A stretch of 64,000 nt of DNA from positions 6,944,001-7,008,000 of the forward strand of contig OU015569.1 in assembly GCA_907165135.1 (NCBI GenBank), written 5' to 3'. The stretch is from Oikopleura dioica. Its lineage: Eukaryota > Animalia > Chordata. Below the pieces are notes generated by a model, which was not told where the DNA came from, searched no databases, and saw nothing but the letters and a program-made list of their open reading frames with translations. The position numbers and the translations under genes are program-made. This document shows, in pieces, positions 24,447-36,990 of the stretch; the first letter of the stretch is position 1; each line of letters opens with the position of its first letter.

Positions 24447-25111
24447 CTGCTCAGAACCTTTCCCACTTGCCAACACAGAAACAAACTTTAAAAACTATTG
24501 AGAACGAAATAAACGAAAATTGAAAAATGGTGAATCCGAAACTGCATTAGAGACGGAGAAACCGTGAATGTCAACAGCCGCAATTTCACAGAATCCAAAT
24601 TATATAGGAAAACGAAACAATTTCAAGGTTTGAAATAAATCACCACTCCCGTCTTTCATTTTTATTGTTCACCGTTAATGCCATGACTTAAAACCTATCC
24701 AAAAGCAACTCTTGCAGCAGAAACCCGCTTTTATTTCTATTACCGTTCTCTTTTTTTAACTCTTATAAATATCCTTTACGAAAAGGCGTTAGTCTAATTG
24801 TTTTTTTTTATGTTTGTGGCTCAAAGCTAAAAATCCGATTTAGACGAACAATCAGGGATAATTGGTACTGAGATATATTTTTCGATCACTTAGATTTAAC
24901 CAAAATATAAGAACTTATCAAAGTAATTGATTAAATCTCGATTCATAAGTTGAAATGTTTTTTATAAAAAGGAGAAATAATTCTCAGAATTTCATTGGAC
25001 AAGCGCTGAAATTTTATTCTAGCGGCCCGGTCGTCTTCTCTCCTCGGTCTTCGACAGCGGAAGTGACTGCGATTCTTTCTTTGATAATTCTTATTCTTCT
25101 TCTCCACCTAG

Positions 25112-28100
25112 ATGCGCGCTCTGTTGCGTATCTAGCCACCTCGGCCAGGGTGAACTTATCCGTTATGCGCCTTCAGCCGGATTCGACCCATTTCAGGTAG
25201 AGAACTCCCTTCTAGCGACCGAAAACATTCAACATGTTTAGCAATCGTCAGAAAGAAACTCTCCATCTCCGAAAACTCCGCGACGCTCAACCCGCAGCGG
25301 CACCAAGCGCGCCCTCTCCCTTCATTCCGAAGACAGTCTCAGCAAAATCGGAAGGGCGGACGTTCTAGAGCCCATACACGTCTTCGAATCCACAGGCCAC
25401 GTCTTTGCCCACCACTGCTGCGCAGCCTGGAGTGAGGGTGTTGCCACAGCGCGGGGTTTCGAAAATAGCCACGAAAATCATCCTGCCAAAAAAAGTAAAT
25501 TCACGTTCATTAAACATAGCCTAATTATGAGAATTATAGTTCGTAGTCTGAAGAGTGAGTTCTCTGAAGATGTAACTCTTGTCGGCGTCGATCGCGCTGT
25601 TTTCTCGAGTTTACGTCAGAAGTGCTCCTACTGCCAAAACTACGGAGCCTCCGTGCGCTGTAAAGTCTCCAACTGCTCGTCATATTATCACTACCCGTGC
25701 GCGGTAGCTTCTGGCGCCTTCCAAGACGCCGAATCCTGTTCGGTTCTTTGCGCTCCAGAGCATCGTCACCAAGCGCGTCTTATCGACCCTTCTGGCTGTG
25801 AATTCTGTAGTCAAGTGGGTGAGCTCTCCGATCTCTTGTTTTGCACGACTTGCGGGGCCCACTCGCACGCGCGTTGCCTCAACGAAGGAATCATCGTTAC
25901 CGGCGAAGTGCGCGCCGGCTGGCAGTGCTACACTTGTAAAATTTGCCAGCAATGTCGAAAGTCGGATGACGACGCGCAGATGATTATATGTGAAACGTGC
26001 GACAAAGGCTGGCATACTTACTGTTTGAACCCTGTTATGGACTCCGTGCCTAAAGATGGCTGGAGCTGCAACAATTGCCGCAACTGCATCGATTGCGGCA
26101 ACAAAATACGAAACGGGCATCTGATTCCAACAAACACCCACTCGCCGGCGAAAGAGCAGCTGCTTTGCACCAACTGCAAGAACCACCGTCTCAAGACCGA
26201 GTGCATCGTTTGTCACGCCGAGTGTCTCGACGAAGATGAGCTCATAAAGTGTTCGGAATGTGGCTCTCGCTGTCACCTTGGGTGTGATCCTGACAAGACT
26301 TACCAATGTCCCAACTGTCGCCCGTTTGACATTCCCAAATCTCCCCAATCGTCGAAGTCGGACTCCTGCTTTACCGACGAAATCTCTGCAAAAGAATCTA
26401 TCGACTCTGACATGACAAAATCTACTGAAATAACGGACGTAGATTCACCCAAGCCCTTTTACAGTAACGATTCTCCTTCGCTTGAGCCAAAAGAAGAGCA
26501 GATATCATCTAACGATCAAATCACTAGCAGTTTACGCTGCTCGGCACAAACAACCACAAGCTCCAAAGCTGCGAGTAGCTCAAAGCCGACGAATAAGTCA
26601 TCGAATAAACCACCGAGTAGCAAGCCGCCAACGAAGAAATCGCAGAAAAAAGGCGCAAGGAAGGGGACGAAAATGAAAAAAGACCAACGCACGAAAAACT
26701 CGACTAGTGATGGCCAGCAATCGAACGCTCAAAAGCGCAACAAGCGAAAAGCAATCGACTCGTTGAAGGCTGGAACGGATGGGAGTCAAGGCTCGGCTGA
26801 TCGCGATTCTACTTTCGACGAGTTTAGATGTGTATTGCTCGGAGATGCGGAGGAAGATGAATTTGTAAGAAGTAGTGATTTGTGCGCTACATGCGGTGCC
26901 ATCGGCGATAGGGAGCACTTTGAATCAAAGATGCTTTTCTGTATCGTCTGCGCCCAAAGTTACCACGTTTACTGTGCTGAAGTAACGCTGAGCAAGGAAC
27001 TGTTAGAAAAGGGATGGACCTGTCCCCATTGCCGTATCTGTCCGAAATGCGATGAATCCGTGCAGCCTGCTGACTCGAGCGCTTCGACCTGCTCACAGTG
27101 CTATCAGACCTTTCATCACATCTGCCTGAATAGAAAACCAATCGCCAGTGCGGCGGAAACACCCAATCAATCCTCAATTCTTCAATCAGACGACGGCACA
27201 GCCACGACTCCTACAGACTGCAAAAACTCTCAATCGAAATGGAAGTGTGACGACTGCATTAAATGCAACTCATGTGGAACGACAACTCTCAACAATTCTA
27301 ATCTCGAGTGGCAAAACGATTACTCAAATTGTCCGGTTTGCTGGTCTAAGCAGGTCTGTTGTATCTGCAACAAGAACTACAAGGAAGATGACGTTTTACT
27401 AAAATGCTCTGATTGCCTCAGATGGCAACACGCATTGCATGAGCAGGTTTACTCAGAGAGTGATGCTGATTCAATGGCTGAGCAAAATTTCAAGTGCACG
27501 ATGTGCCGCCCTTCGAAAAAAGTTTACAAGCCCTTGCGTATCCACAATTCGAACGATATTGTGATAGATACCTTCAACTGGTCAAATGAACCGGATATTC
27601 AAAAGACACACGAAAAGGATGGAGTCGCATTCACAGATGAAGGCCTTCAAACATTCCAAAGCGAGCTGAGTCGACTTATTGGCTCTATGAGAAAACCTCG
27701 AACTCCGTCGCTGAAGTCAATGAATCCAAGTGAGCCTCCGAGTCCGACTCATCCAGAAATCGACGATGAGCCAAAGGATCTTAATCACACCAATGGAGCA
27801 TCGGCAAATGGGGAGCAACCGCGAAAACGCAAACCTTATCGACCTGGCATTGGCGGTTTTCTCGTCAGAACTCGTAATCGCGTAGCCAAGCCTAAAGCTG
27901 TTCTTGATACTGGGAACTCTTCTGACTCGAACAACCCTGTCAAAACTGAACCAAAAAAACAAAATAAAAAGAAGAAAAGCAAGATTATCGACAACTATCC
28001 TCAATACATCCAGGAAGCTTTTTTTGGGCAGCTCGCACATGATTCAAAAATGTGCGATTTGGCAAATATCAAAACAGAACCCGTTGATAGTAGTCTTGGA

Positions 28101-31100
28101 ACGTCAGTAGGAATTAACCAAGTCATCGTCAAGTCGGAGCCAGTGGATGTGTACAATGCAGAAACTGACTCTCAGTCAACTTCCGACAATATAAATGAGC
28201 TAGTGACGCCTATAGAAGATACCTCATTGATCATTCTAGATCAGCCACTTCCCGAAATGGCTGAAAGCTCTGGTGCCAATGATCCAGATATCTTCTTCGA
28301 TCTTACGAATTTTGAAAAAGACTTCGACGATGTTATAGATATGAGTCAGATTATCAATGACATCAAATCAGAAGCAGGGTGGCTATTTTGGACAAAATTT
28401 TGGGGTCTGGCCATCCAATTTCCATCCAATAAATTTTGAGCCGGAACTATCCATCCAAAATCCAATCCAACCCAATTATTACCCAATTACCCAAAAATCC
28501 CCAATTCCAATTAGATCCAATTGGATTTCCAATTTTTCCAAGGCTTTTATCTCTTTGAAAAGAAGGGAAACAGTAAGTTTTTATCCAAAAGGAGGGTCAA
28601 CATAGCCAAAACAATGATTTTTTTATCCGAAATTTCTCATTTTCATTATGAAAATGACCCTTCTTTGCATAGTTTAGCGATATATTTTTTATTGGATCCA
28701 ATTCCCCAATTTCCCCCAATTGCCCAATTTTCCCCAACAAAATCCGGTACCCTGGCCATCCAAATTCCATCCAAACCTTATTGGATTGGATCCAATCCAA
28801 TTCCAACTAACCCCCAAATCCAAAATAGCCACCCTGATCAGAAGAAGATAAACCGGAAGATACCCCGACAAGCTCTACTACATTGAAAGAAGACTCGAAG
28901 CCCAATGTAGTTCTTCCTGTTGGGTCTGTATCATCCCCCACGCCAGTTTCATCTGGTCAACACATTGGGGCCACTTCTGCAAATGTTGGAATAAACAGAG
29001 TGATTCCGAATGGCATTCTAGCACAAAATGTTCCTCCAGAAGGAGCTCATATTACCAGTCCGATGCCTACCCCAGTTATTTATCAACCACCCCAAGTTGT
29101 AGCGCAACCGATTGGTTCGCAACAAGTCGTCCAAGTAACTCAGAGTCATCATGGTCACATATCTCCTCAAATTCAGGTGCGGCAAGTCATGTCTGAGCAG
29201 GTGCGGCCGCGAATTCACCCGCAGAACTATCAACAAAACTACTTGTCAATGAACAATTGTACATTGCAGCGGCAAATGGCAGTTCCAATGTCTGGTCATG
29301 GTCCTCCACCTCCTCATGGCCACATCCCCAACCACGTTCAGCAAATGCAGAATTGGAATGGAACTCGCGATCAAATACAAAAAAGCCAGAATGAGCCTTC
29401 ATCAAGTAACAATCGTAATAACTCGGAAAAATGGCGGGAAGACGAAGCTCGTGGTGACAAAGCTACTATTTCACCAGTTCTTTATGCGAATACAATGCAC
29501 CCTCATTTGAAGACAGAATTCCCAGATTGGAATGATAGACACAAACAGATTCAGCGGCTTTGGCGAAAAGTTCCTGGAGAAGGGCGAAAATCCTATCTTT
29601 CTAAGGCAAGAGAGAACCGCGATAAAAAGACCGGAAATAAAAGCTCCTCTCGTTCCCGATCAACTTCTTTAAATAAGCCGCCAAAAACTCAGTCGCCCAA
29701 CGAACAATCGGACAAAACACCGGAGAAAGAGTCGAGTGATCAAGCCTGGAAGCAATTTATATGTGCTTCGAGTCCGAATTCGTCTGTGCCTTCGCCAAAA
29801 CCAGTACAAAGTCCTGCGGCCACCTCTTTTTCACCGAATCCCTCTGCTACACCTAGTCACCAAGTGAATCAAAGTCCTGTTCCTAGTCCCCAATCGGGAT
29901 CCCCTGCGCCTGCCATGTCAAATACAGATCCTATGTTCAGTCACATGAGTCCTGACTCTAGCTCGCCGCTGATTCCTCCATCCCGAAAAATGAGCTCTGA
30001 CTTTGGCTCATCCCAAGGCTCTCTTCCAGGGACTCCACGATCTCCTATGCCACCTCCTGCCATGTCTCCGTCCGTGGGCGACGTCTTCCCATCTCCTCGA
30101 CTTCAAAACCAACCTTCTTTGCGTTTCCCTTCTACAACACACACCTCCAGCACGAACTCACCCCCGACCACCGGTCTTCAACCTCAGCAAGCACCATCAG
30201 CTCAGCAGAATATTGTACAACTACAGATCCGTCCAAATCAACCACATCACTGTGAACGCTTATTCGATAATCTCGGACGTCAGCAGTCAGGCTCTCTAGC
30301 TCGTGAAATTATCAACAATAAGCTTCAACGAAAAGAGCGAATGCGAAGGACTGAAGAAGCCTCGAATCAGATATGGAATACAGCTACTGCGCAAAACCCG
30401 GGATCACTGATGTACAATCAGCAAGGCCAACCTATTCACATCGGCCAAAGATTTCCAATGCAACCAGGACCTGGTGGCTCTACCGCGGTTCAAGGGCTTC
30501 CTGGCGCATCTTTCAATCCAATAATTCAACATCGGCAGCCTATCCGACTTATTCCAAATAACCAAACAGCGCAGTCAGTTCGTTTCCAGCAGGCTCAAGT
30601 TATTACTCCTCAACATCCTCATCAACAAATTATTGGTTCTGATCCTATCAAGATCAATGGCGCTGTACAAATCGAGCTAAAAAATGGGAATTCGTCGCCT
30701 TCGAACGGCGTCGTTACTGTTGCACGTGCGCCGTTAAATCATAATTATAGTAATAATCAGCCGATAACTGCTCCGACCGGAAGTGACCAGAGCTCAACCG
30801 ATAAAATGTTTAGTCAAAGCTTAGAATCGACTCCTTCTCCCACTCAAATACCACAATTAGATGGTCAGAATGATTCTGAAGACGAAATCCCAGTTGCCCA
30901 ACGTCCTCCGAAGCCACCAGCTCCTAAAACGCCTCCTTTTGTCGTTCTTCCGCTTGGTACTACCTCACCGAAAGGCGAAAAAATGGCAGGGAAAGAGATG
31001 TCACCCAAGCAAAAGACAATCGTAGCAACAGCGAAAGTGCAAAAACCAGGTTCACCAGCTTCAAGTCCCACCAATCGTCAGATTCGAATGTCTCCCAGCC

Positions 31101-34100
31101 ACACTGGAAGCTATCGGCCTGTCGGTTTGAGCCCGCGTGCAATCTCTCCAGGACGTCCTCTTCAACACGGCCAGAGTGCGCCGACGCTTATCAAACTGAC
31201 CCAGCCTGTAACATTGGTAGTAAATACTTCGGTAAAAGTTAACACTCCGAGCTCAAGCACGCTACAAAAAGAAGTTGTGGTAACAGATAATGCTTCTGAA
31301 GATACTTCTAACTCTCGAACACCTACAGTAGAGCTTCCACCTCCACCAAAAGAAGAGAATCAGGTATATAAACCCAATTATTTCAGCGAACTTATTTTTA
31401 ATCGCTATAGAATAACGAGATCGAAGAAGCCAAGAAGCTTATCTATAATAAGCTAAAGAATTTGGGAGAACTTGGGCGGCAAAAGAAGAATTTATCCTCG
31501 GGTAGGAAAACAGTTCAAATTAAGAAGAAGTCTGATCCATCCTCATCTTCACCTACTCCGCAAGGATCAAACTCGCCAGGTTCATCCCGCCATCGAACGA
31601 AATCTGGAAATAACCGCACTGACGATAAGAAACCCGAGGTCAACAAAAAGAAGACTTTCGAAGTGTTGAGGCAAATTCAATCCCGCAAAAGTCCTAATGG
31701 CAGTCTTGCATCATTCAACGGCAAGACTGCGGATATTCGAGTTCAAATGCCTCATCAGACTGCAATGCAACCGAATTTAAATGGGTCTCCTTCGGCGAGC
31801 ACGCGATCTTTAAATCCTGACAGCAACAACTCTCCCCAGATTCATGGTATTCCCATCGTTGTTTCGTCTCACATTGATGCTACTGGAAAAGGGCAGTCGG
31901 ATGTTGTTACAACGAGCACAGCAGACCCTACTAAAGCTCAGCCAAGAGCACGGAAACCCCGCCCGAAGAAATCCAAGAAGAACAAAGAGGAACCAAAGGT
32001 CGACATACAAGCTGCTCAAAAATACAACCAGGGCACACAGAATAGCTTTCAACCTCGCCTCCCCGTACTTGGAGATATAAAATCTATGCCAAAGAAACCT
32101 GTTGGTCCTGTTTCATCATCTAGTATGGCGAAGAACATTGCAGTTACGCTCCCGCCCAATAGTTCTCTCTCTGGGACAACAAGCCAAAGGACGTCGTCTG
32201 CAGATTCGAAAGACGAAATTGTTAAACGGCAAGAACTGCTGAACAATCTTTTGAGCGCGGACGAATTGACAATCACAAGTCCAACGACAGACCCGTCTGC
32301 TCGTGGGACAAAAGTCTCCGAAGAACAACTTAAGATGCTTGGTATTTCGTTGAAACATCACTCCAAAAGTGACGAGACGCCGGTTTCTAGCGTGGAGTCT
32401 AATGGAACACCTAAAGTTGGTGTGAAAGTGAGTCAACCAGCTTCTGTCCCCTTCTCTACGGATTCACCGTCAATGGAAGTCAAAACTGAAGCTCAAGCAC
32501 CGGTTGTTGTTAAACAGGAACCAACTGATCAGCCGCTCGACAAATCAAATGACTCGGAAAAACTTGGTGAGCTCAACAAATCCCGCAAACGAAAGAAATC
32601 GCTCGAAAGCAAACCACAGAAAAAAAGAAAGCGCGATGCTGATTCTAACCAATATTCCGCAATGTCAGTCCAACTTGGACTCACAGAAGCGCCTGTTAGA
32701 ATTAATATCGATCCCTGTGTTCCGCTTGGAGGTGGTACTCTTGGTGCTGTTGCGAAAAAATCTTTAGAGTTAGAGGAAACGTGGGGAGGGCATTGGGCGT
32801 CAGGAGGTTGGAGTAACACTTCTGCAAGCTTCTATGATATGATCGTGAATTTCCAACACTTTGTGGAGATGCCCAAAGGAAACGATATTCAAACGATACT
32901 AGATCTATCATCCAAGTTCGGTCAAACGAAATCATTCTTTTCTGTGTCACTAACAGACGAAGAAAATTCTTCTGATGAGGAATCTTCTGTGCCCGACTTG
33001 TCGCTCAAGTAAGTTATTACAAAATAACTACATATACAATAAGAGCTGATCTATTTAATCCGAGAAATCATTTGTAAACATAATTTCAGTGAAATGGGCA
33101 AGATCGGCTCGTTAGAAGAAATTGCACCAAGAATGTCACACGACTTTCCAGTTGCCCCAGCGTCTCCGGAAGTTCAGGAGCGAAATGTCTATACCTTTCT
33201 TGACAAGGAAGGAATCTTCGAAGCTAACTCGGGCGACGGAAAGGAACGCACTTGTCCTAGTCCTGAATTGCCGATGCCAAGCGATAATCCGAGGGACCCG
33301 GTGACGGTGACACTCACCTTCAGACCTGACCAGGCAGGACAGCCCGGTGACAGAAGTAATATTGAAAACGCTTTGAAAGCGATTTCGAATATTATCGGCA
33401 TCAAGATCGAAGGTTATCGAGTGTCTCAAAGCGGTTCACCCGCTCAACAGCACAAAACATCAACGTCGGAGGTGCCAGCTAAGGAAGAAACTCGCCGTTG
33501 CTCCAAATGTGGCGAACACATTATTGGAGAAGCAAGCAAAAAGCCAATTACATCAAAACAGCATCCCGACTCTTTCTATTGCACCGTTAGCTGTCGAGTG
33601 GTAAGCTTGTAATATTTTTGTAAAAGATAAAAATCTGCTATAAGATCGATCAGACGTTCAAGGAAGAAGCCTCAAAGCTAAAGATCGATTCCTCTGCGGC
33701 TGACAAAAAACAAAAGGTATCAAGTTGACGTCAACCGACTTAACAATTATGTTCAGGTTAATGCTTACAAACGACGAAACTACAGAATTTGTCTGGCAGA
33801 TTTGCTCGATGCCGACACAACCGTTTTCTCTGATGATTTACCCGACATCGCCCCTCAAAAAATCAGCTCTCGCGGACGTCGCCAAGCGTCGGAGACCCAT
33901 CTTGTTAATTTTGGGCGCTCTCTTATGCACAAAAATGTTCTTTGGAACGTCTGGAACAGTAAATTTGCACCAGTACCGAAGGTAACCGTAGCGACAGCAA
34001 AAATGTTTCTAACAAGAGTGAATTTAGTTCCCATCCCAAGATCAAGGAAGTTATTCTCGTTCATTGAGCGTCAAATACGAGCAAAACTTTGGGAAGAGCT

Positions 34101-35595
34101 TAGACAAGCGATCTTGTCTTCTTTGCAAAATTAGAGGAGACGGGAAAGCCGACACTCTTGGCCGGCTTCTCAACGTCGGTATCGGGCGCTGGGTTCATGT
34201 CAACTGTATATTATGGGCAGCCGATGTTCGTGAAGACCCTTCCGGTGCCCTCATCAACGTACTCAAGGGTTAAGCAAGTGCCAACCAATGACCTGCGCCA
34301 CTTGCGGCGGTTTTGGAGCTTCTGTTTCTTGCTCACGCCTCCGCTGCGATCTTCACTTCCACATTGAATGTGCCTTTAAATCTGGAGGCACCTTCCTAAG
34401 ACAACAACAGTTTTATTGCTCTTCACATTTACCGAAGGCACAGTCTTGCGACGCTCTAAAGTCGCTTGCTTGTTGTCGACGTTTATTTATAGACGGCTGC
34501 GATATCGAAGCGGTGAGTCTTTGTTAAATTAATTTTCATAAGAGAATCTTCAGTTATCAAAGCCTTTATCACTTGCGAAGCCGTCAGCCCATCTGCGAGT
34601 GGGTTCACTCAAGATCTTCAGTCTTGGCGAGATCGACCCCGCAATGCAGCTTCTATACAAAGAAATTAAGGGCTTCATCGCGCCCGTGGGCCTGAGCTGG
34701 TCGCGATATTTTTGGACTTCACCGCGTGAGAGATCCAACTATAACTTTTGCATATCGCGTGGAAGCTCAGGGCGCGCCGAATTTAAAGTTCAAACAATGG
34801 CTGCTTCTCATACTTATTACATGGACTCAAATCTTAACTCCATCTTCGAGCCTATTGGAATGTCCTTTCCAAAACAGGCGATGACCGTTGCTGCGTTTAT
34901 TCTAAATTTCTCTGCTCCACAGATCCAGCTTTTGCTTCAGAAAATGCCGCTCGCTTCCTTCCTAGGAAAAGATTTCCTGGGAAAATTTGAGAAACTAGCG
35001 CAGGCGCTAGCTCCGGAAGCCAAGCGGCACTGTCCTGCACATAAAAACTCGTCAAAAAGTCAAAGTCATCACAATCACCCCAAGCAAAATAATGTCTATC
35101 TTCAAGCTTCACCTATTCATGAAATCGGTCTTTTCTCTTCCTTAACAGTCGAGCCCGGACAAGTTATTATTGAGCTATCGCGAGCCATTCCAAAAGAACT
35201 AGCCGATCGCATGTCTTTCAGCATTCGGTAAATGATAAACCACCGGAAATGTGCTTTCAATAATTTTTCTAGCTTCAAGCAAGCCCCTTCGGAGCAATTC
35301 ATTGAAAACGTTCAAATGGCACCCTGTCGATTTGTAAATCATTCGAAGACGCCGAACTGCGAATTCCGACTTCTCGATTATTTTTCAACTTCTGACAGCG
35401 CACTGAAAATAAACGACGGTAACTCAGTGCTCAAGGCTGTGCTCATCTCAACAAAACTCGTTAAAAAGGGCGAGGAAATAACAGTTGATTACGCTCGTCA
35501 CTCGATAGTAAGTAAATTTCCTCCTCCCACGGACTTTAATCCTTCTATTTCAGGAAAGCCGTAAGCACAAGTTCTTCTCGCTACAACCATCTTAA
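25112..35595 (+). CDS. KMT2C/KMT2D: Histone H3K4 methyltransferase KMT2C/KMT2D (MLL3/4, trithorax-related) family protein; start codon not located
   Basis: N-terminal ePHD (CALC...LGQGEL; AHHCCAAWSEGV; CSYC...GASVRC...YHYPC), tandem PHD fingers, HMG box (ATISPVLYANTMHPHLKTEFPDWNDRHKQIQRLWRK...ARENR), C-terminal ePHD (GRLLNVGIGRWVHVNCILW...GALINV), FYRN (RVGSLKIFSLGEI), weak FYRC, and SET (NVYL..S.IH.IGLF; RFVNHS; GEEITVDY). Confidence 0.93.
28375..28836. mobile_element. Non-autonomous hAT-like DNA transposon (MITE), 462 bp
   Basis: Perfect 18-bp TIRs CAGGGTGGCTATTTTGGA (28375-92) / TCCAAAATAGCCACCCTG (28819-36) and a perfect 8-bp TSD ATCAGAAG (28367-74, 28837-44). Dense subterminal CCAAT/ATCCAA repeats and a 23-bp direct repeat at 28407-29/28752-74 (1 mismatch). 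No coding capacity evident. An 8-bp TSD with a CAGG.. terminus is characteristic of hAT. Confidence 0.93.
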
Positions 35596-35835
35596 TGCTT
35601 TCAACTGCTTACTTAACATTTTACTATTCTATTTACTATACTTTTTCAACTTATTACGATCCTTTCCGATTCCTTATTCTAGATATATGTTCAGATGAAT
35701 TGAAATACATTCAACCATGCATTCGATAAATATTTTTTTTTCTGCAGGCTCTCGGAGTTTTAAAGCAGGCATTTTTTATCGGAGATAGGATTCATTCAGC
35801 GTGTGTTTAAGAAATGAAGATGGACACTTTTAAGA

Positions 35836-36798
35836 ATGGTCAAAGTGTTAGACTTACCCATCTACGATCCGCCAGGGTCGGCAATCAAGCCTATTCCTAT
35901 GGACGTGGCGAATATGGAAGTCGTGCTCACAAATTGCTTTCGGGATTTCGTTAAGACTCCAAGCTTGAGCTTTTGTGCTGATAGAAACCGTGATCTTCTC
36001 AGTGCACGGGAGTTTCTTTTTACTCCTATCGGTGCGGCCCAGGTTGCTACTGATTATTATTATTATTAATATAATTATTATTAATAATATTATTAATAAT
36101 ATAATAGGTGGCTACTCTGGCGGGTTCTTTTGTTGTGGGCAGGAAGTTTGCGAATAGACTCCTTCCTGTTAGGAAAAGCGATTTAAAAAATATTTCAAAA
36201 CGGATCAAATTTCCCAAGTACTCGCTCTTGAGGGTTTTAAATCAGATCAAGACAGCATGGGAGCATGTACACTCGCCCCTTTCTAGCAGCAAACTACGCC
36301 CTTCAAGTTGCTGTACCCTTAGGAACCACGTGTGCTTGGTACGAGACACCCAGAGAATGGACGATCTGGGCTCTCAAAAATTCTGTTATATACAGGTCCT
36401 AAATTTGAATTTCCCCCATTTAAAAGAGTGTTCAGTGCAAACGCTGTTTACTATACGGTTTACTATAGTTTCTGGCTGGTCGGCAAGTTTTTTGGACTCA
36501 TATGGAGTGCCATCGCGGGCTTTTTTGGAATGATTTGGGCTGCCATAAAAGGTATCCGATCAAGTCTGATCTGGTGACGATTGTGTGTGTTTTAGGAGTT
36601 TTCATGGGTGCTTGGTGGGTTGTGAAAACCACTGGAAATGGAATCATGGCTATAGGAAGCCTTTTCGGGTCGAGTGAGGAGGAAGCACCTGCTATTGAAG
36701 TCACCAAGGAAGAACCAGTCGAAGAGGAAGGCGTGAACCCTACCGAGGTTGAGCTCGAACTGAAATCCGCTAAACGACACGCCCAAGAAGAACGTTAG
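35836..36798 (+). CDS. MICOS subunit MIC26/MIC27 (APOO/APOOL)-like
   Basis: MVKVLDLPIYDPP resembles the APOO/APOOL N-terminal VK..LPIY..P. AQVATLAGSFVVGRK and ALQVAVPLGTTCAWYETP resemble the two hydrophobic segments. Requires introns 36043-36107 (GT-AG) and 36173-36245 (GA-AG) plus two GT-AG introns. Confidence 0.55.
36052..36105. repeat. AT-only (TTA/AAT) low-complexity tract containing a perfect 26-bp palindrome
   Basis: After G36052, 53 consecutive A/T bases; 36076-36101 TATTATTAATAATATTATTAATAATA is its own reverse complement. Confidence 0.9.
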
Positions 36799-36990
36799 TG
36801 CTCGAAAATTTGTTTATTCGCAGGAAACATACAAGTCAGCAAAGAAACGAGCATTCAAGGGCGCATTTTTCCATTTCGAGAGTCTTCATATTCTGCCAAC
36901 ATAACACGATATCGCAGCTGGTCAAGTTGCCAGACTAACTGTGCCCTTCGACTTGGGGTCCGCATCTAGCCACGAATAGGCACGGGCAGT

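What the first reader, a model, noticed from the sequence alone, without database searches (positions are those of the whole stretch)
35080..35595. KMT2C/D SET domain has lost all four Zn ligands (NHSK, no post-SET) and the WIN motif: a probable pseudo-methyltransferase
Seen: SET reads NNVYLQASPIHEIGLF...VIIELSR...RFVNHSKTPNC...GEEITVDYARHS|IESRKHKFFSLQPS*. Established: in SET1/MLL enzymes the Cys of NHSC plus the post-SET CxCx4C bind a Zn that completes the active site, GxG contributes to SAM binding, EYxG is conserved, and a WIN motif (ARxE) between FYRC and SET recruits WDR5. Here NHSC is NHSK, no CxC occurs in any frame after the last intron, GxG is EIG, EYIG is ELSR, and no ARxE lies in the shortened FYRC-SET linker, while PHD and HMG modules remain well conserved. 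Inference: coordinated loss points to selection for a non-catalytic scaffold/reader role, predicting altered enhancer H3K4me1 biology in this lineage.
Basis: partly seen in the sequence, partly recalled or inferred. Interest (0 to 1): 0.72.

Follow-up and report, generated by a model that had tools for sequence, protein, structure and literature searches.

The report
Oikopleura KMT2C/D with degenerate SET domain
In the tunicate Oikopleura dioica, the one MLL3/4-type enhancer-regulator gene reported by a published survey ends in a methyltransferase domain that has lost its zinc site, its WDR5-docking motif and several active-site residues in every lineage sampled, yet selection still keeps its core, so it probably works without its usual enzyme activity; nobody has assayed it, and this genome copy carries an unexplained one-base frameshift upstream.

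Summary
The + strand gene at about 25.5-35.6 kb is an O. dioica KMT2C/D (MLL3/4, Trr) orthologue. Its SET domain reads NHSK and ends 18 residues after the catalytic Tyr, with no Cys-rich post-SET and no WIN motif.

A spliced transcript contig and the public Norwegian model (CBY36241.1) confirm both introns, the stop and the 3'UTR. The NHSC cysteine is K, S, A or L in four lineages or species, so the loss is old.

The gene is not decaying. The SET core blocks evolve as slowly as the PHD, HMG and ePHD modules. The SET-I remnant and two other blocks (52 codons) are indistinguishable from neutral. Also lost are the EY lysine-channel Tyr, the F/Y-switch Tyr, the hydroxyl of the SAM-contact Tyr and 8 residues of SET-I. 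Kept are the SAM loop, R..NHS, PNC and the catalytic Tyr.

"HMG well conserved" holds between lineages but not against the Pfam model.

Loss of canonical H3K4 activity is probable (about 0.55) but unproven. A zinc-free active enzyme remains possible.

New caveat: the window has a 1-nt deletion at 34260/34261 in the ePHD exon.

The parts
25527..28436 (+). Large exon/ORF with the N-terminal PHD-finger cluster of the KMT2C/D gene
   Evidence: Pfam PHD E 1.4e-21 in 3 stretches, plus zf-HC5HC2H. Against Norway: 82-92% aa identity, dN 0.06-0.12.
28883..31453 (+). Large exon/ORF with a weak HMG-box match
   Evidence: Pfam HMG_box E 0.0094, 16.8 bits, below the 25.4 cut-off. Well conserved between lineages: dN about 0.11.
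34028..34512 (+). ePHD exon. It carries a 1-nt deletion at 34260/34261 relative to two other lineages; the upstream frame then meets TAA at 34271-34273.
   Evidence: Pfam zf-HC5HC2H on the pieces. Sequence read. DNA alignment with L003 and L009.
34554..35227 (+). Exon holding FYRN (about 34593-34760), an FYRC-like stretch, the linker and the N-terminal half of SET
   Evidence: Pfam FYRN E 1.3e-4. Relatives P0001-P0006. dN/dS 0.12-0.55.
34989..35039 (+). Invariant linker motif EKLAQALAPEAKRHCPA, about 30 residues before SET, at the place where a WIN motif would be expected. It is not a canonical WIN.
   Evidence: Identical in all lineages aligned. dN 0.057 for the 20-codon block 34986-35045 that contains it. 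No AR[ASTC]E in the gene.
35088..35177 (+). SET-N core NNVYLQASPIHEIGLFSS..VIIEL. The SAM loop S.IH..GL is kept. The first Gly of GxG is Glu. The EY tyrosine (KMT2C Y4800) is Leu at 35175-35177.
   Evidence: dN 0.10. Residue roles from PMC10715303.
35178..35227 (+). SET-I remnant with an 8-residue deletion (7 in the HMMER alignment); hypervariable
   Evidence: The deletion removes the conserved xGExxR columns. 35% aa identity to Norway, dN 0.78.
35228..35272 (+). Intron 1 (45 nt, GTAAAT..TTCTAG, phase 2)
   Evidence: Sequence. The homologous intron is removed in transcript contig L001 relative to genome L009.
35273..35507 (+). SET-C exon. It contains NHSK at 35337-35348 (Lys 35346-35348 replaces the Zn-ligand Cys), a lineage-variable insert at 35378-35435, the F/Y-switch position as Val at 35484-35486, and the retained catalytic Tyr at 35490-35492.
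   Evidence: Pfam SET E 6.8e-9. Alignments A2 and to canonical proteins. dN/dS about 0.2.
35508..35553 (+). Intron 2 (46 nt, GTAAGT..TTTCAG, phase 0)
   Evidence: Sequence. The intron sits at the same position in L002, L006, L008 and L010, and is removed in L001.
35554..35595 (+). Last exon ESRKHKFFSLQPS plus the TAA stop: a Cys-free 13-residue tail in place of the post-SET
   Evidence: The tail reads ASRKHKLQLFS in two other lineages.
35596..35729 (+). 3'UTR block more conserved than the coding sequence
   Evidence: 86.7% identity to Norway, against 76-79% in the CDS. Alignment A4. No Rfam family and no stable fold, z +1.08.

Best explanation
This is the Oikopleura dioica orthologue of KMT2C/D (MLL3/4, fly Lpt+Trr); the published survey of the Norwegian genome lists only one. 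It is an intact, expressed gene. Its C-terminal SET domain has been remodelled into a form that very probably no longer carries out canonical WRAD-assisted H3K4 methylation.

Shown:
- The Zn4 cluster is gone. The NHSC Cys is K, S, A or L depending on lineage, and all three post-SET Cys are absent.
- The WIN motif is absent.
- The lysine-channel Tyr of the EY motif is Leu, and the F/Y-switch Tyr is Val.
- The SAM-contacting Tyr of the CYMF motif has lost its hydroxyl.
- 8 residues at the start of SET-I are deleted.
- The SET-I remnant and a hairpin insert evolve at a near-neutral rate.
- The beta-core and the NHS pseudoknot are as constrained as the PHD, HMG and ePHD modules.

Inferred:
- The substrate groove and the closing lid of the active site are no longer used.
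- The domain persists as a folded structural or docking module, for example for protein stability or COMPASS-core contacts.
- The protein's essential work is non-catalytic (enhancer co-activation, UTX stabilisation), as shown experimentally for fly Trr lacking its SET domain.
- H3K4me1 in this animal would then be written mainly by SETD1B or other enzymes.
For: - Gene identity: PHD cluster, weak HMG, ePHD, FYRN and SET. The best solved relatives are KMT2D and KMT2C (profile E 4.8e-11 to 1e-8).
- Losses relative to 47 canonical SET1/MLL proteins: EY Tyr (96% conserved) is Leu; xGExxR is deleted; CYMF Tyr is Phe and its Phe is Ile; NHSC Cys (96%) is Lys; the switch Tyr (91%) is Val; the KF after YDY is lost; the three post-SET Cys (98-100%) are absent.
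- Of the four residues PMC10715303 calls critical in KMT2C (Y4825, L4783, Y4800, Y4886), two have lost their hydroxyls.
- Age of the loss: the same losses occur in the Norwegian lineage (NHSS), a Pacific-type metagenome lineage (NHSA) and a more distant Tara contig (NHSL, no Cys in the 18 residues after the shared intron).
- 3' end: confirmed by a spliced transcript contig. No CxC motif downstream.
- Selection (Okinawa against Norway): SET pN is 0.259 against 0.104 for PHD+HMG+ePHD (p 9e-13). SET core blocks have pN 0.086. The variable blocks have pN 0.497 against pS 0.629, not significantly different.
- Divergence: only 7 hits at E<=1e-3 among 1.84 billion representatives.
- Literature: a survey of the Norwegian genome lists a single MLL3/4 and finds no MLL1 (PMC5240408). 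Trr C2398A is catalytic-defective, and Trr without its SET domain still rescues viability (PMC7608747).
Against: - The motifs that bind SAM and catalyse transfer are kept and strongly constrained: S.IH..GL, R..NHS, PNC, GEE.T.DY with the catalytic Tyr (NHS block dN 0.07).
- The short tail (RHSI.SRKHK plus hydrophobics) is conserved and could act as a zinc-free lid.
- Active SET enzymes with zinc-free post-SET motifs exist, for example SETD8 (PMC6579520).
- H3K4me1 peaks exist in O. dioica (PMC5240408).
- dS is saturated (1-2.6), and the blocks were chosen after inspecting the alignment.
- The AlphaFold model is confident only for the core (mean pLDDT 58.7).
- There is no biochemical data.
- Oikopleura proteins are generally very divergent.
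Confidence: 0.55

Rival explanations
1. The domain is still a working SAM-dependent methyltransferase that has replaced the zinc-bound post-SET by a short zinc-free tail, as SETD8 and SET7/9 do. Its lysine channel would be remodelled, giving a different product state or a new substrate, and it would no longer depend on WDR5.
For: - The SAM loop, R..NHS, PNC and the catalytic Tyr are retained and under strong purifying selection.
- The tail is conserved: dN/dS 0.06 between window and Norway over 9 codons, and identical between two other lineages.
- Foldseek also recovers vSET and SETD8 among matches to the modelled core.
- SETD8's post-SET is a zinc-free loop-helix-helix that binds SAM and substrate (PMC6579520).
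- H3K4me1 exists in O. dioica (PMC5240408).
Against: - In the SET1/MLL family a mutation of Trr C2398 makes the enzyme catalytic-defective (PMC7608747). By my residue arithmetic this is the first post-SET Cys.
- The EY Tyr, the switch Tyr, the CYMF hydroxyl and part of SET-I are all lost together.
- The region that should form the substrate groove evolves at a near-neutral rate and varies in length between lineages. That is hard to reconcile with a conserved substrate.
Confidence: 0.3
2. It is a gene-model artefact: the real protein has a normal post-SET supplied by a missed downstream exon or an alternative isoform.
For: Rare isoforms cannot be excluded.
Against: - Transcript contig L001 runs from SET through the stop into at least 170 nt of colinear 3'UTR.
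- The stop is at the same place in three lineages.
- No CxCx(2-8)C occurs in any + frame for 1 kb downstream, and the next ORFs belong to another gene with no Pfam family.
- The NHSC Cys, which lies inside a confirmed exon, is also lost.
Confidence: 0.03
3. The locus is a decaying copy: either a pseudogene, given the 1-nt frameshift at 34260/34261, or a degenerate duplicate of an intact KMT2C/D elsewhere in the genome.
For: As assembled, the frame breaks in the ePHD exon and meets a stop at 34271. This genome could not be searched for paralogues with the tools at hand.
Against: - About 7 kb of upstream ORF and all downstream exons are open.
- dN/dS is 0.12 against a same-lineage contig (dS 0.15) and about 0.2 against other lineages.
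- The degenerate SET is shared by lineages whose gene is intact and transcribed.
- The published survey lists only one MLL3/4 in O. dioica (PMC5240408).
- The two Norwegian entries are 98-99% identical, as expected for haplotype copies.
Confidence: 0.05

Closest known systems
Human KMT2D/KMT2C (MLL4/MLL3) SET domains (PDB 4Z4P, 5F59, 5F6K, 6KIW)
   Same: They are the best sequence and profile matches. The flanking HSKSSQ..NNVYL segment, the S/I..GL loop, R.(I/V)NHS, PNC and GEE.T.DY are shared. The overall gene architecture is the same: PHD clusters, HMG, ePHD, FYRN, SET.
   Different: No Zn ligands (KMT2C C4851, C4899, C4901 and C4906 all lack counterparts). No WIN motif. Y4800 is Leu, Y4884 is Val, and Y4825 has lost its hydroxyl. 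There is a 7-8 residue deletion in SET-I and a 13-19 residue insert in the SET-C hairpin. Only 18 residues follow the catalytic Tyr, against 25.
Engineered catalytic-dead or SET-deleted Trr/MLL3/MLL4 (Trr C2398A, Trr del4; Rickels et al., PMC7608747)
   Same: They are KMT2C/D-type proteins without working methyltransferase chemistry that still support development. This is the functional state proposed here.
   Different: Those are laboratory alleles. This is a naturally evolved state shared by several lineages, and its inactivity is inferred, not measured.
Zinc-free SET lysine methyltransferases (SETD8/PR-Set7, SET7/9, viral vSET)
   Same: They have no Cys-rich post-SET. SETD8 and vSET appear among the structural matches to the modelled core. 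From memory and untested, SETD8 also reads NHSK.
   Different: Those enzymes keep the EY-type Tyr, an ordered SET-I and a defined C-flank helix that closes the SAM and lysine sites (PMC6579520). Here SET-I is truncated and hypervariable, and the tail is 18 residues long and modelled with low confidence.
KMT2E (MLL5)/SETD5-type SET domains reported as inactive (from memory, not tested here)
   Same: They are KMT2-named proteins whose SET domain is thought to be non-catalytic and to serve chromatin-reader or scaffold roles.
   Different: They belong to a different, non-orthologous SET subfamily. The Oikopleura protein is a KMT2C/D orthologue and keeps the NH and catalytic Tyr.

Membership tests
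KMT2C/D (MLL3/4, Lpt+Trr) orthologue | N-terminal clusters of PHD fingers | tested here: met
   Pfam PHD E 1.4e-21 in 3 stretches, plus zf-HC5HC2H, in exon 25527-28436.
KMT2C/D (MLL3/4, Lpt+Trr) orthologue | HMG box between the PHD clusters and the C-terminal module | tested here: inconclusive
   Pfam HMG_box 16.8 bits, E 0.0094, below the 25.4 cut-off.
KMT2C/D (MLL3/4, Lpt+Trr) orthologue | ePHD followed by adjacent FYRN and FYRC just before SET | tested here: inconclusive
   The ePHD scores 36.7-40.8 bits on the Norwegian model. FYRN is sub-threshold at 21.9 bits against a cut-off of 24. FYRC is not detected by Pfam, although an FYRC-like conserved stretch is present.
KMT2C/D (MLL3/4, Lpt+Trr) orthologue | SET domain closest to KMT2C/D among SET families | tested here: met
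   The top solved matches are KMT2D and KMT2C, ahead of KMT2A/B and SETD2. PMC5240408 lists it as MLL3/4.
Catalytically competent SET1/MLL methyltransferase | Zn cluster formed by the NHSC Cys plus post-SET CxCx4C | tested here: not met
   The window reads NHSK; relatives read S, A or L. No Cys in the tail and no CxC in any + frame downstream. Ligand identities from PMC10715303.
Catalytically competent SET1/MLL methyltransferase | Active-site tyrosines (KMT2C Y4800 in EY, Y4886 in YDY) and the SAM-contact Y4825 | tested here: not met
   Y4800 is Leu and Y4825 is Phe (or Ser in the HMMER alignment). Only Y4886 is kept.
Catalytically competent SET1/MLL methyltransferase | SAM loop (S.IH..GL) and NH of the pseudoknot | tested here: met
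   All are retained in every lineage.
Catalytically competent SET1/MLL methyltransferase | WIN motif (G[SC]AR[AST]E) upstream of SET for WDR5 docking | tested here: not met
   There is no AR[ASTC]E in P0014 or in any open frame of 25000-35700. As a positive control, 5 of 9 canonical FYRC+SET proteins have it.
Catalytically competent SET1/MLL methyltransferase | Measured methyl transfer to H3K4 | not testable with these tools
   This needs a biochemical assay.
Zinc-free active SET enzymes (SETD8/SET7/9-like) | Ordered C-flank (post-SET) helix that closes the SAM and lysine sites | tested here: inconclusive
   The tail is conserved in sequence, but AlphaFold gives pLDDT 34-43 for residues 144-156.

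The most novel reading that the evidence does not exclude
The domain is not dead but re-engineered. It would be a KMT2C/D SET that has dispensed with zinc, WDR5 docking and the canonical H3 groove while keeping a selected SAM pocket and catalytic Tyr. It would then act either on a different substrate or as a SAM-binding regulatory module. That would make it the first zinc-free member of the SET1/MLL clade.
Probability: 0.2. Interest if true: 0.75.

Novelty: new variant of a known kind. Interest (0 to 1): 0.58.

Why it matters
Whether MLL3/4-type proteins act at enhancers through H3K4me1 or through non-catalytic scaffolding is actively debated. The debate rests on engineered catalytic-dead alleles in flies, worms and mouse cells.

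A chordate lineage whose only reported KMT2C/D has naturally lost the zinc cluster, the WIN motif and the lysine-channel tyrosines, yet keeps the gene under selection and still shows H3K4me1 on chromatin, would be an evolutionary counterpart of those alleles. It makes two questions directly testable in a tractable animal:
- Which enzyme writes enhancer H3K4me1 when KMT2C/D cannot?
- What does a SET fold do once catalysis is gone?

It also warns that automatic names such as '[histone H3]-lysine(4) N-methyltransferase' for this protein are unverified.

Tried and rejected
- Word search with the SET-C exon found no candidates.
With A2 it returned only another Norwegian-type contig.
- Exact look-ups of the window's ORFs were blank.
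- The first AlphaFold run, with a 13-row alignment, failed (pLDDT 29.7). The second, with 54 rows, is confident only for the core, so no conclusions about the pocket were drawn from it.
- P0009 (an intact SET1-like protein) was considered as a possible Oikopleura SETD1, but its contig looks like an unrelated compact eukaryote. It was used only as a canonical comparator.
- The conserved 3'UTR block was considered as a hidden exon. It has no AG acceptor in phase and no CxC.
- The same block was considered as a structured RNA. There was no Rfam hit and z was +1.08.
- Scan notes searched by words or by sequence gave no other SET1/MLL gene in this genome. That blank is uninformative.
- The window's own exons were never joined. 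Spliced natural relatives (P0005, P0014, P0015) stood in for the whole SET domain.
Full report
WHAT IS THERE

The + strand of the window carries one long gene from about 25.5 kb to 35.6 kb.
- Its large exons encode a PHD-finger cluster (Pfam PHD E 1.4e-21, three stretches).
- A second large exon holds a weak HMG-box match (16.8 bits, below the cut-off).
- A low-complexity exon follows, then an extended PHD finger.
- Next come a sub-threshold FYRN and a SET domain.
- Profile comparison with all solved structures puts KMT2D and KMT2C first (E 4.8e-11 to 1e-8), ahead of KMT2A/B and SETD2.

The organism is Oikopleura dioica. The 90% cluster of a close relative contains GenBank CBY36241.1 and CBY13435.1 of that species. 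Notes by other agents of this scan call this genome the Okinawan type; I did not test that. A published survey of the Norwegian genome lists one MLL3/4, one SETD1B and one MLL5, and finds no MLL1 (PMC5240408).

THE OBSERVATION

The exon structure is:
- SET-N ends at 35227.
- Intron 1 is 35228-35272, 45 nt, phase 2.
- The SET-C exon is 35273-35507.
- Intron 2 is 35508-35553, 46 nt, phase 0.
- The last exon is 35554-35595 and encodes 13 residues and a stop.

The model is confirmed in a sister lineage.
- Contig L001 (Logan, ERR9850614) matches the Norwegian genomic scaffold L009 at 99% in three blocks.
- A 459-nt intron and a 46-nt intron are removed exactly, and at least 170 nt of 3'UTR is colinear.
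- Genomic contigs of the same lineage keep both introns.
- The public model CBY36241.1 has the same C-terminus.

No C-x-C-x(2-8)-C occurs in any + frame for 1 kb after 35200. The following ORFs have no Pfam family. No AR[ASTC]E exists anywhere in the gene, whereas five of nine canonical FYRC+SET proteins carry G[CS]AR[AS]E 71-87 residues before SET.

WHAT HAS CHANGED AND WHAT HAS NOT

I aligned the C-termini of 47 canonical SET1/MLL-family proteins and added the Norwegian spliced protein and the window's exons one by one.

Lost in Oikopleura:
- The Tyr of the EY motif (96% conserved; KMT2C Y4800) is Leu.
- The following xGExxR columns are removed by an 8-residue deletion (7 in the HMMER alignment).
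- The Tyr and Phe of CYMF (Y4825) are Phe and Ile.
- The NHSC Cys (C4851) is Lys.
- The F/Y-switch Tyr (Y4884) is Val.
- The KF after YDY is lost.
- All three post-SET Cys (C4899, C4901, C4906) and the CRKYLN end are absent.

Kept in Oikopleura:
- S.IH..GL, the loop between beta1 and beta2 that contacts SAM.
- The Glu of EY.
- R.(F/Y)VNHS and PNC.
- GEE.T.DY with the catalytic Tyr (Y4886).

Residue roles and numbering come from PMC10715303.

The first Gly is G18/S17/D6/A3/N2 in the canonical set, and the invariant second Gly is retained. The tail after the catalytic Tyr is 18 residues, against 25 in KMT2C, so it is better described as a cysteine-free post-SET remnant than as a missing one.

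AGE OF THE LOSS

The position of the zinc-ligand Cys varies by lineage:
- Lys in the window.
- Ser in the Norwegian lineage.
- Ala in a metagenome lineage (L002, P0018, P0019).
- Leu in a much more divergent Tara Oceans contig (L006, 44-50% identity).

L006 shares the intron after ..SI and shows no Cys in the 18 residues that follow. The switch Tyr is Val and the KF is lost in all of them. The degenerate state therefore predates the O. dioica species complex.

SELECTION

Counts are Nei-Gojobori, window against the Norwegian genome. Synonymous sites are saturated (dS 1-2.6), so non-synonymous rates are the safer measure.
- PHD+HMG+ePHD (1698 codons): pN 0.104.
- SET as a whole (125 codons): pN 0.259, Fisher p 9e-13 against the reference.
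- Three SET core blocks (SET-N core, NHS knot, SET-C core; 73 codons): pN 0.086. This is no different from the reference and far below pS (p 2e-11).
- The SET-I remnant, the pre-NHS stretch and the hairpin insert (52 codons): pN 0.497 against pS 0.629, not distinguishable from neutral.

The blocks were chosen after seeing the alignment, so these tests are descriptive. Pairwise dN/dS for the SET-C exon is 0.19-0.21 in three comparisons, and the short tail is conserved. The domain is therefore not decaying. The fold is kept, but the part that forms the substrate groove in active enzymes is free to drift and to change length.

Canonical KMT2 SET domains no longer reach E 1e-3 against this protein in a 1.84-billion-protein library; only 7 hits do, and 4 of those are orthologues.

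STRUCTURE

A 13-row alignment gave a useless model (pLDDT 29.7). With 54 rows the beta-core, the knot and SET-C reach pLDDT 82-90. The SET-I region (residues 45-79), the insert (98-119) and the tail (144-156) stay below 50. Foldseek returns MLL1, MLL3 and MLL4 SET domains first, and also vSET and SETD8. I draw no pocket-level conclusion from this model.

INTERPRETATION

The most likely reading (about 0.55) is that canonical, WRAD-assisted H3K4 methylation has been lost and the SET fold persists as a structural or docking module. The protein's essential role would then be non-catalytic.
- In the fly orthologue, the C2398A change makes the enzyme catalytic-defective. By my residue arithmetic C2398 is the first post-SET Cys; this mapping is an inference.
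- Deletion of the whole SET-containing C-terminus still rescues viability there. The essential function maps to a UTX-stabilising region (PMC7608747).

The main rival (about 0.3) is a still-active, zinc-free enzyme with a remodelled lysine channel.
- The SAM-binding and catalytic motifs and the tail are all under strong constraint.
- SETD8 shows that a zinc-free post-SET can bind SAM and substrate (PMC6579520).
- H3K4me1 is present in O. dioica chromatin (PMC5240408).

Against that rival, the hypervariable, truncated SET-I is hard to square with a conserved substrate.

A missed exon (0.03) and a decaying copy (0.05) are unlikely for the reasons given above.

The WIN motif is literally absent. 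However, a 17-residue motif about 30 residues before SET, EKLAQALAPEAKRHCPA, is invariant in all lineages. It is a candidate replacement docking site. This is inference only.

In the window, the ePHD exon (34028-34512) lacks one base at 34260/34261 relative to both L003 and L009. The upstream frame therefore meets TAA at 34271, while the rest of the gene stays open in the -1 frame.
- About 7 kb of upstream ORF is intact.
- The downstream exons are open.
- dN/dS against a same-lineage contig is 0.12 at dS 0.15.

The break is therefore recent, haplotype-specific or an assembly error.

NOVELTY

I found no paper that notes the degenerate SET domain. Searches combining Oikopleura with KMT2, MLL3/4, Trr, SET domain or COMPASS returned only the 2017 survey, which lists the gene as the H3K4me1/2 writer, and an annelid study that mentions Oikopleura once. 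UniRef names the protein an H3K4 methyltransferase.

I file this as a new variant of a known kind: a KMT2C/D orthologue by architecture and best match that fails the defining features of a competent SET1/MLL catalytic module.

Noticed in passing
window 34260-34273: There is a one-base deletion in the ePHD exon relative to two other O. dioica lineages. The upstream frame stops at 34271-34273, while everything downstream stays open in the -1 frame. This could be an assembly indel, a recent loss-of-function allele or a real truncation.
   Followed up: partly
window 35596-35729: A 3'UTR block of about 130 nt just after the KMT2C/D stop is more conserved between lineages (86.7%) than the coding sequence (76-79%). 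It is AG-poor, has no Rfam match and no stable fold. It ends just before a TTTTTCTGCAG acceptor-like site at about 35747 that may serve the downstream gene, as in an operon.
   Followed up: partly
L002 1028-1475 and L009 12982-13440: The first SET intron is 45 nt in the window but about 450 nt in two other lineages. In L002 it contains terminal-inverted-repeat-like sequence, suggesting a MITE insertion.
   Followed up: no
window 34989-35039: The linker motif EKLAQALAPEAKRHCPA is invariant across all lineages and is flanked by variable sequence. It is a candidate short linear docking motif at the position where a WIN motif would be expected.
   Followed up: partly
window 35836-36800: The downstream same-strand gene starts about 240 nt after the KMT2C/D stop. 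Its ORFs have no Pfam family. Another note of this scan describes its odd AT-rich intron at 36041-36116.
   Followed up: no
L007 1754-3499 and 5160-5723: A compact intron-poor eukaryotic metagenome contig carries a tandemly duplicated block: a SET1-like gene, an unknown 365-residue gene and a calcipressin gene. The organism is unknown.
   Followed up: no
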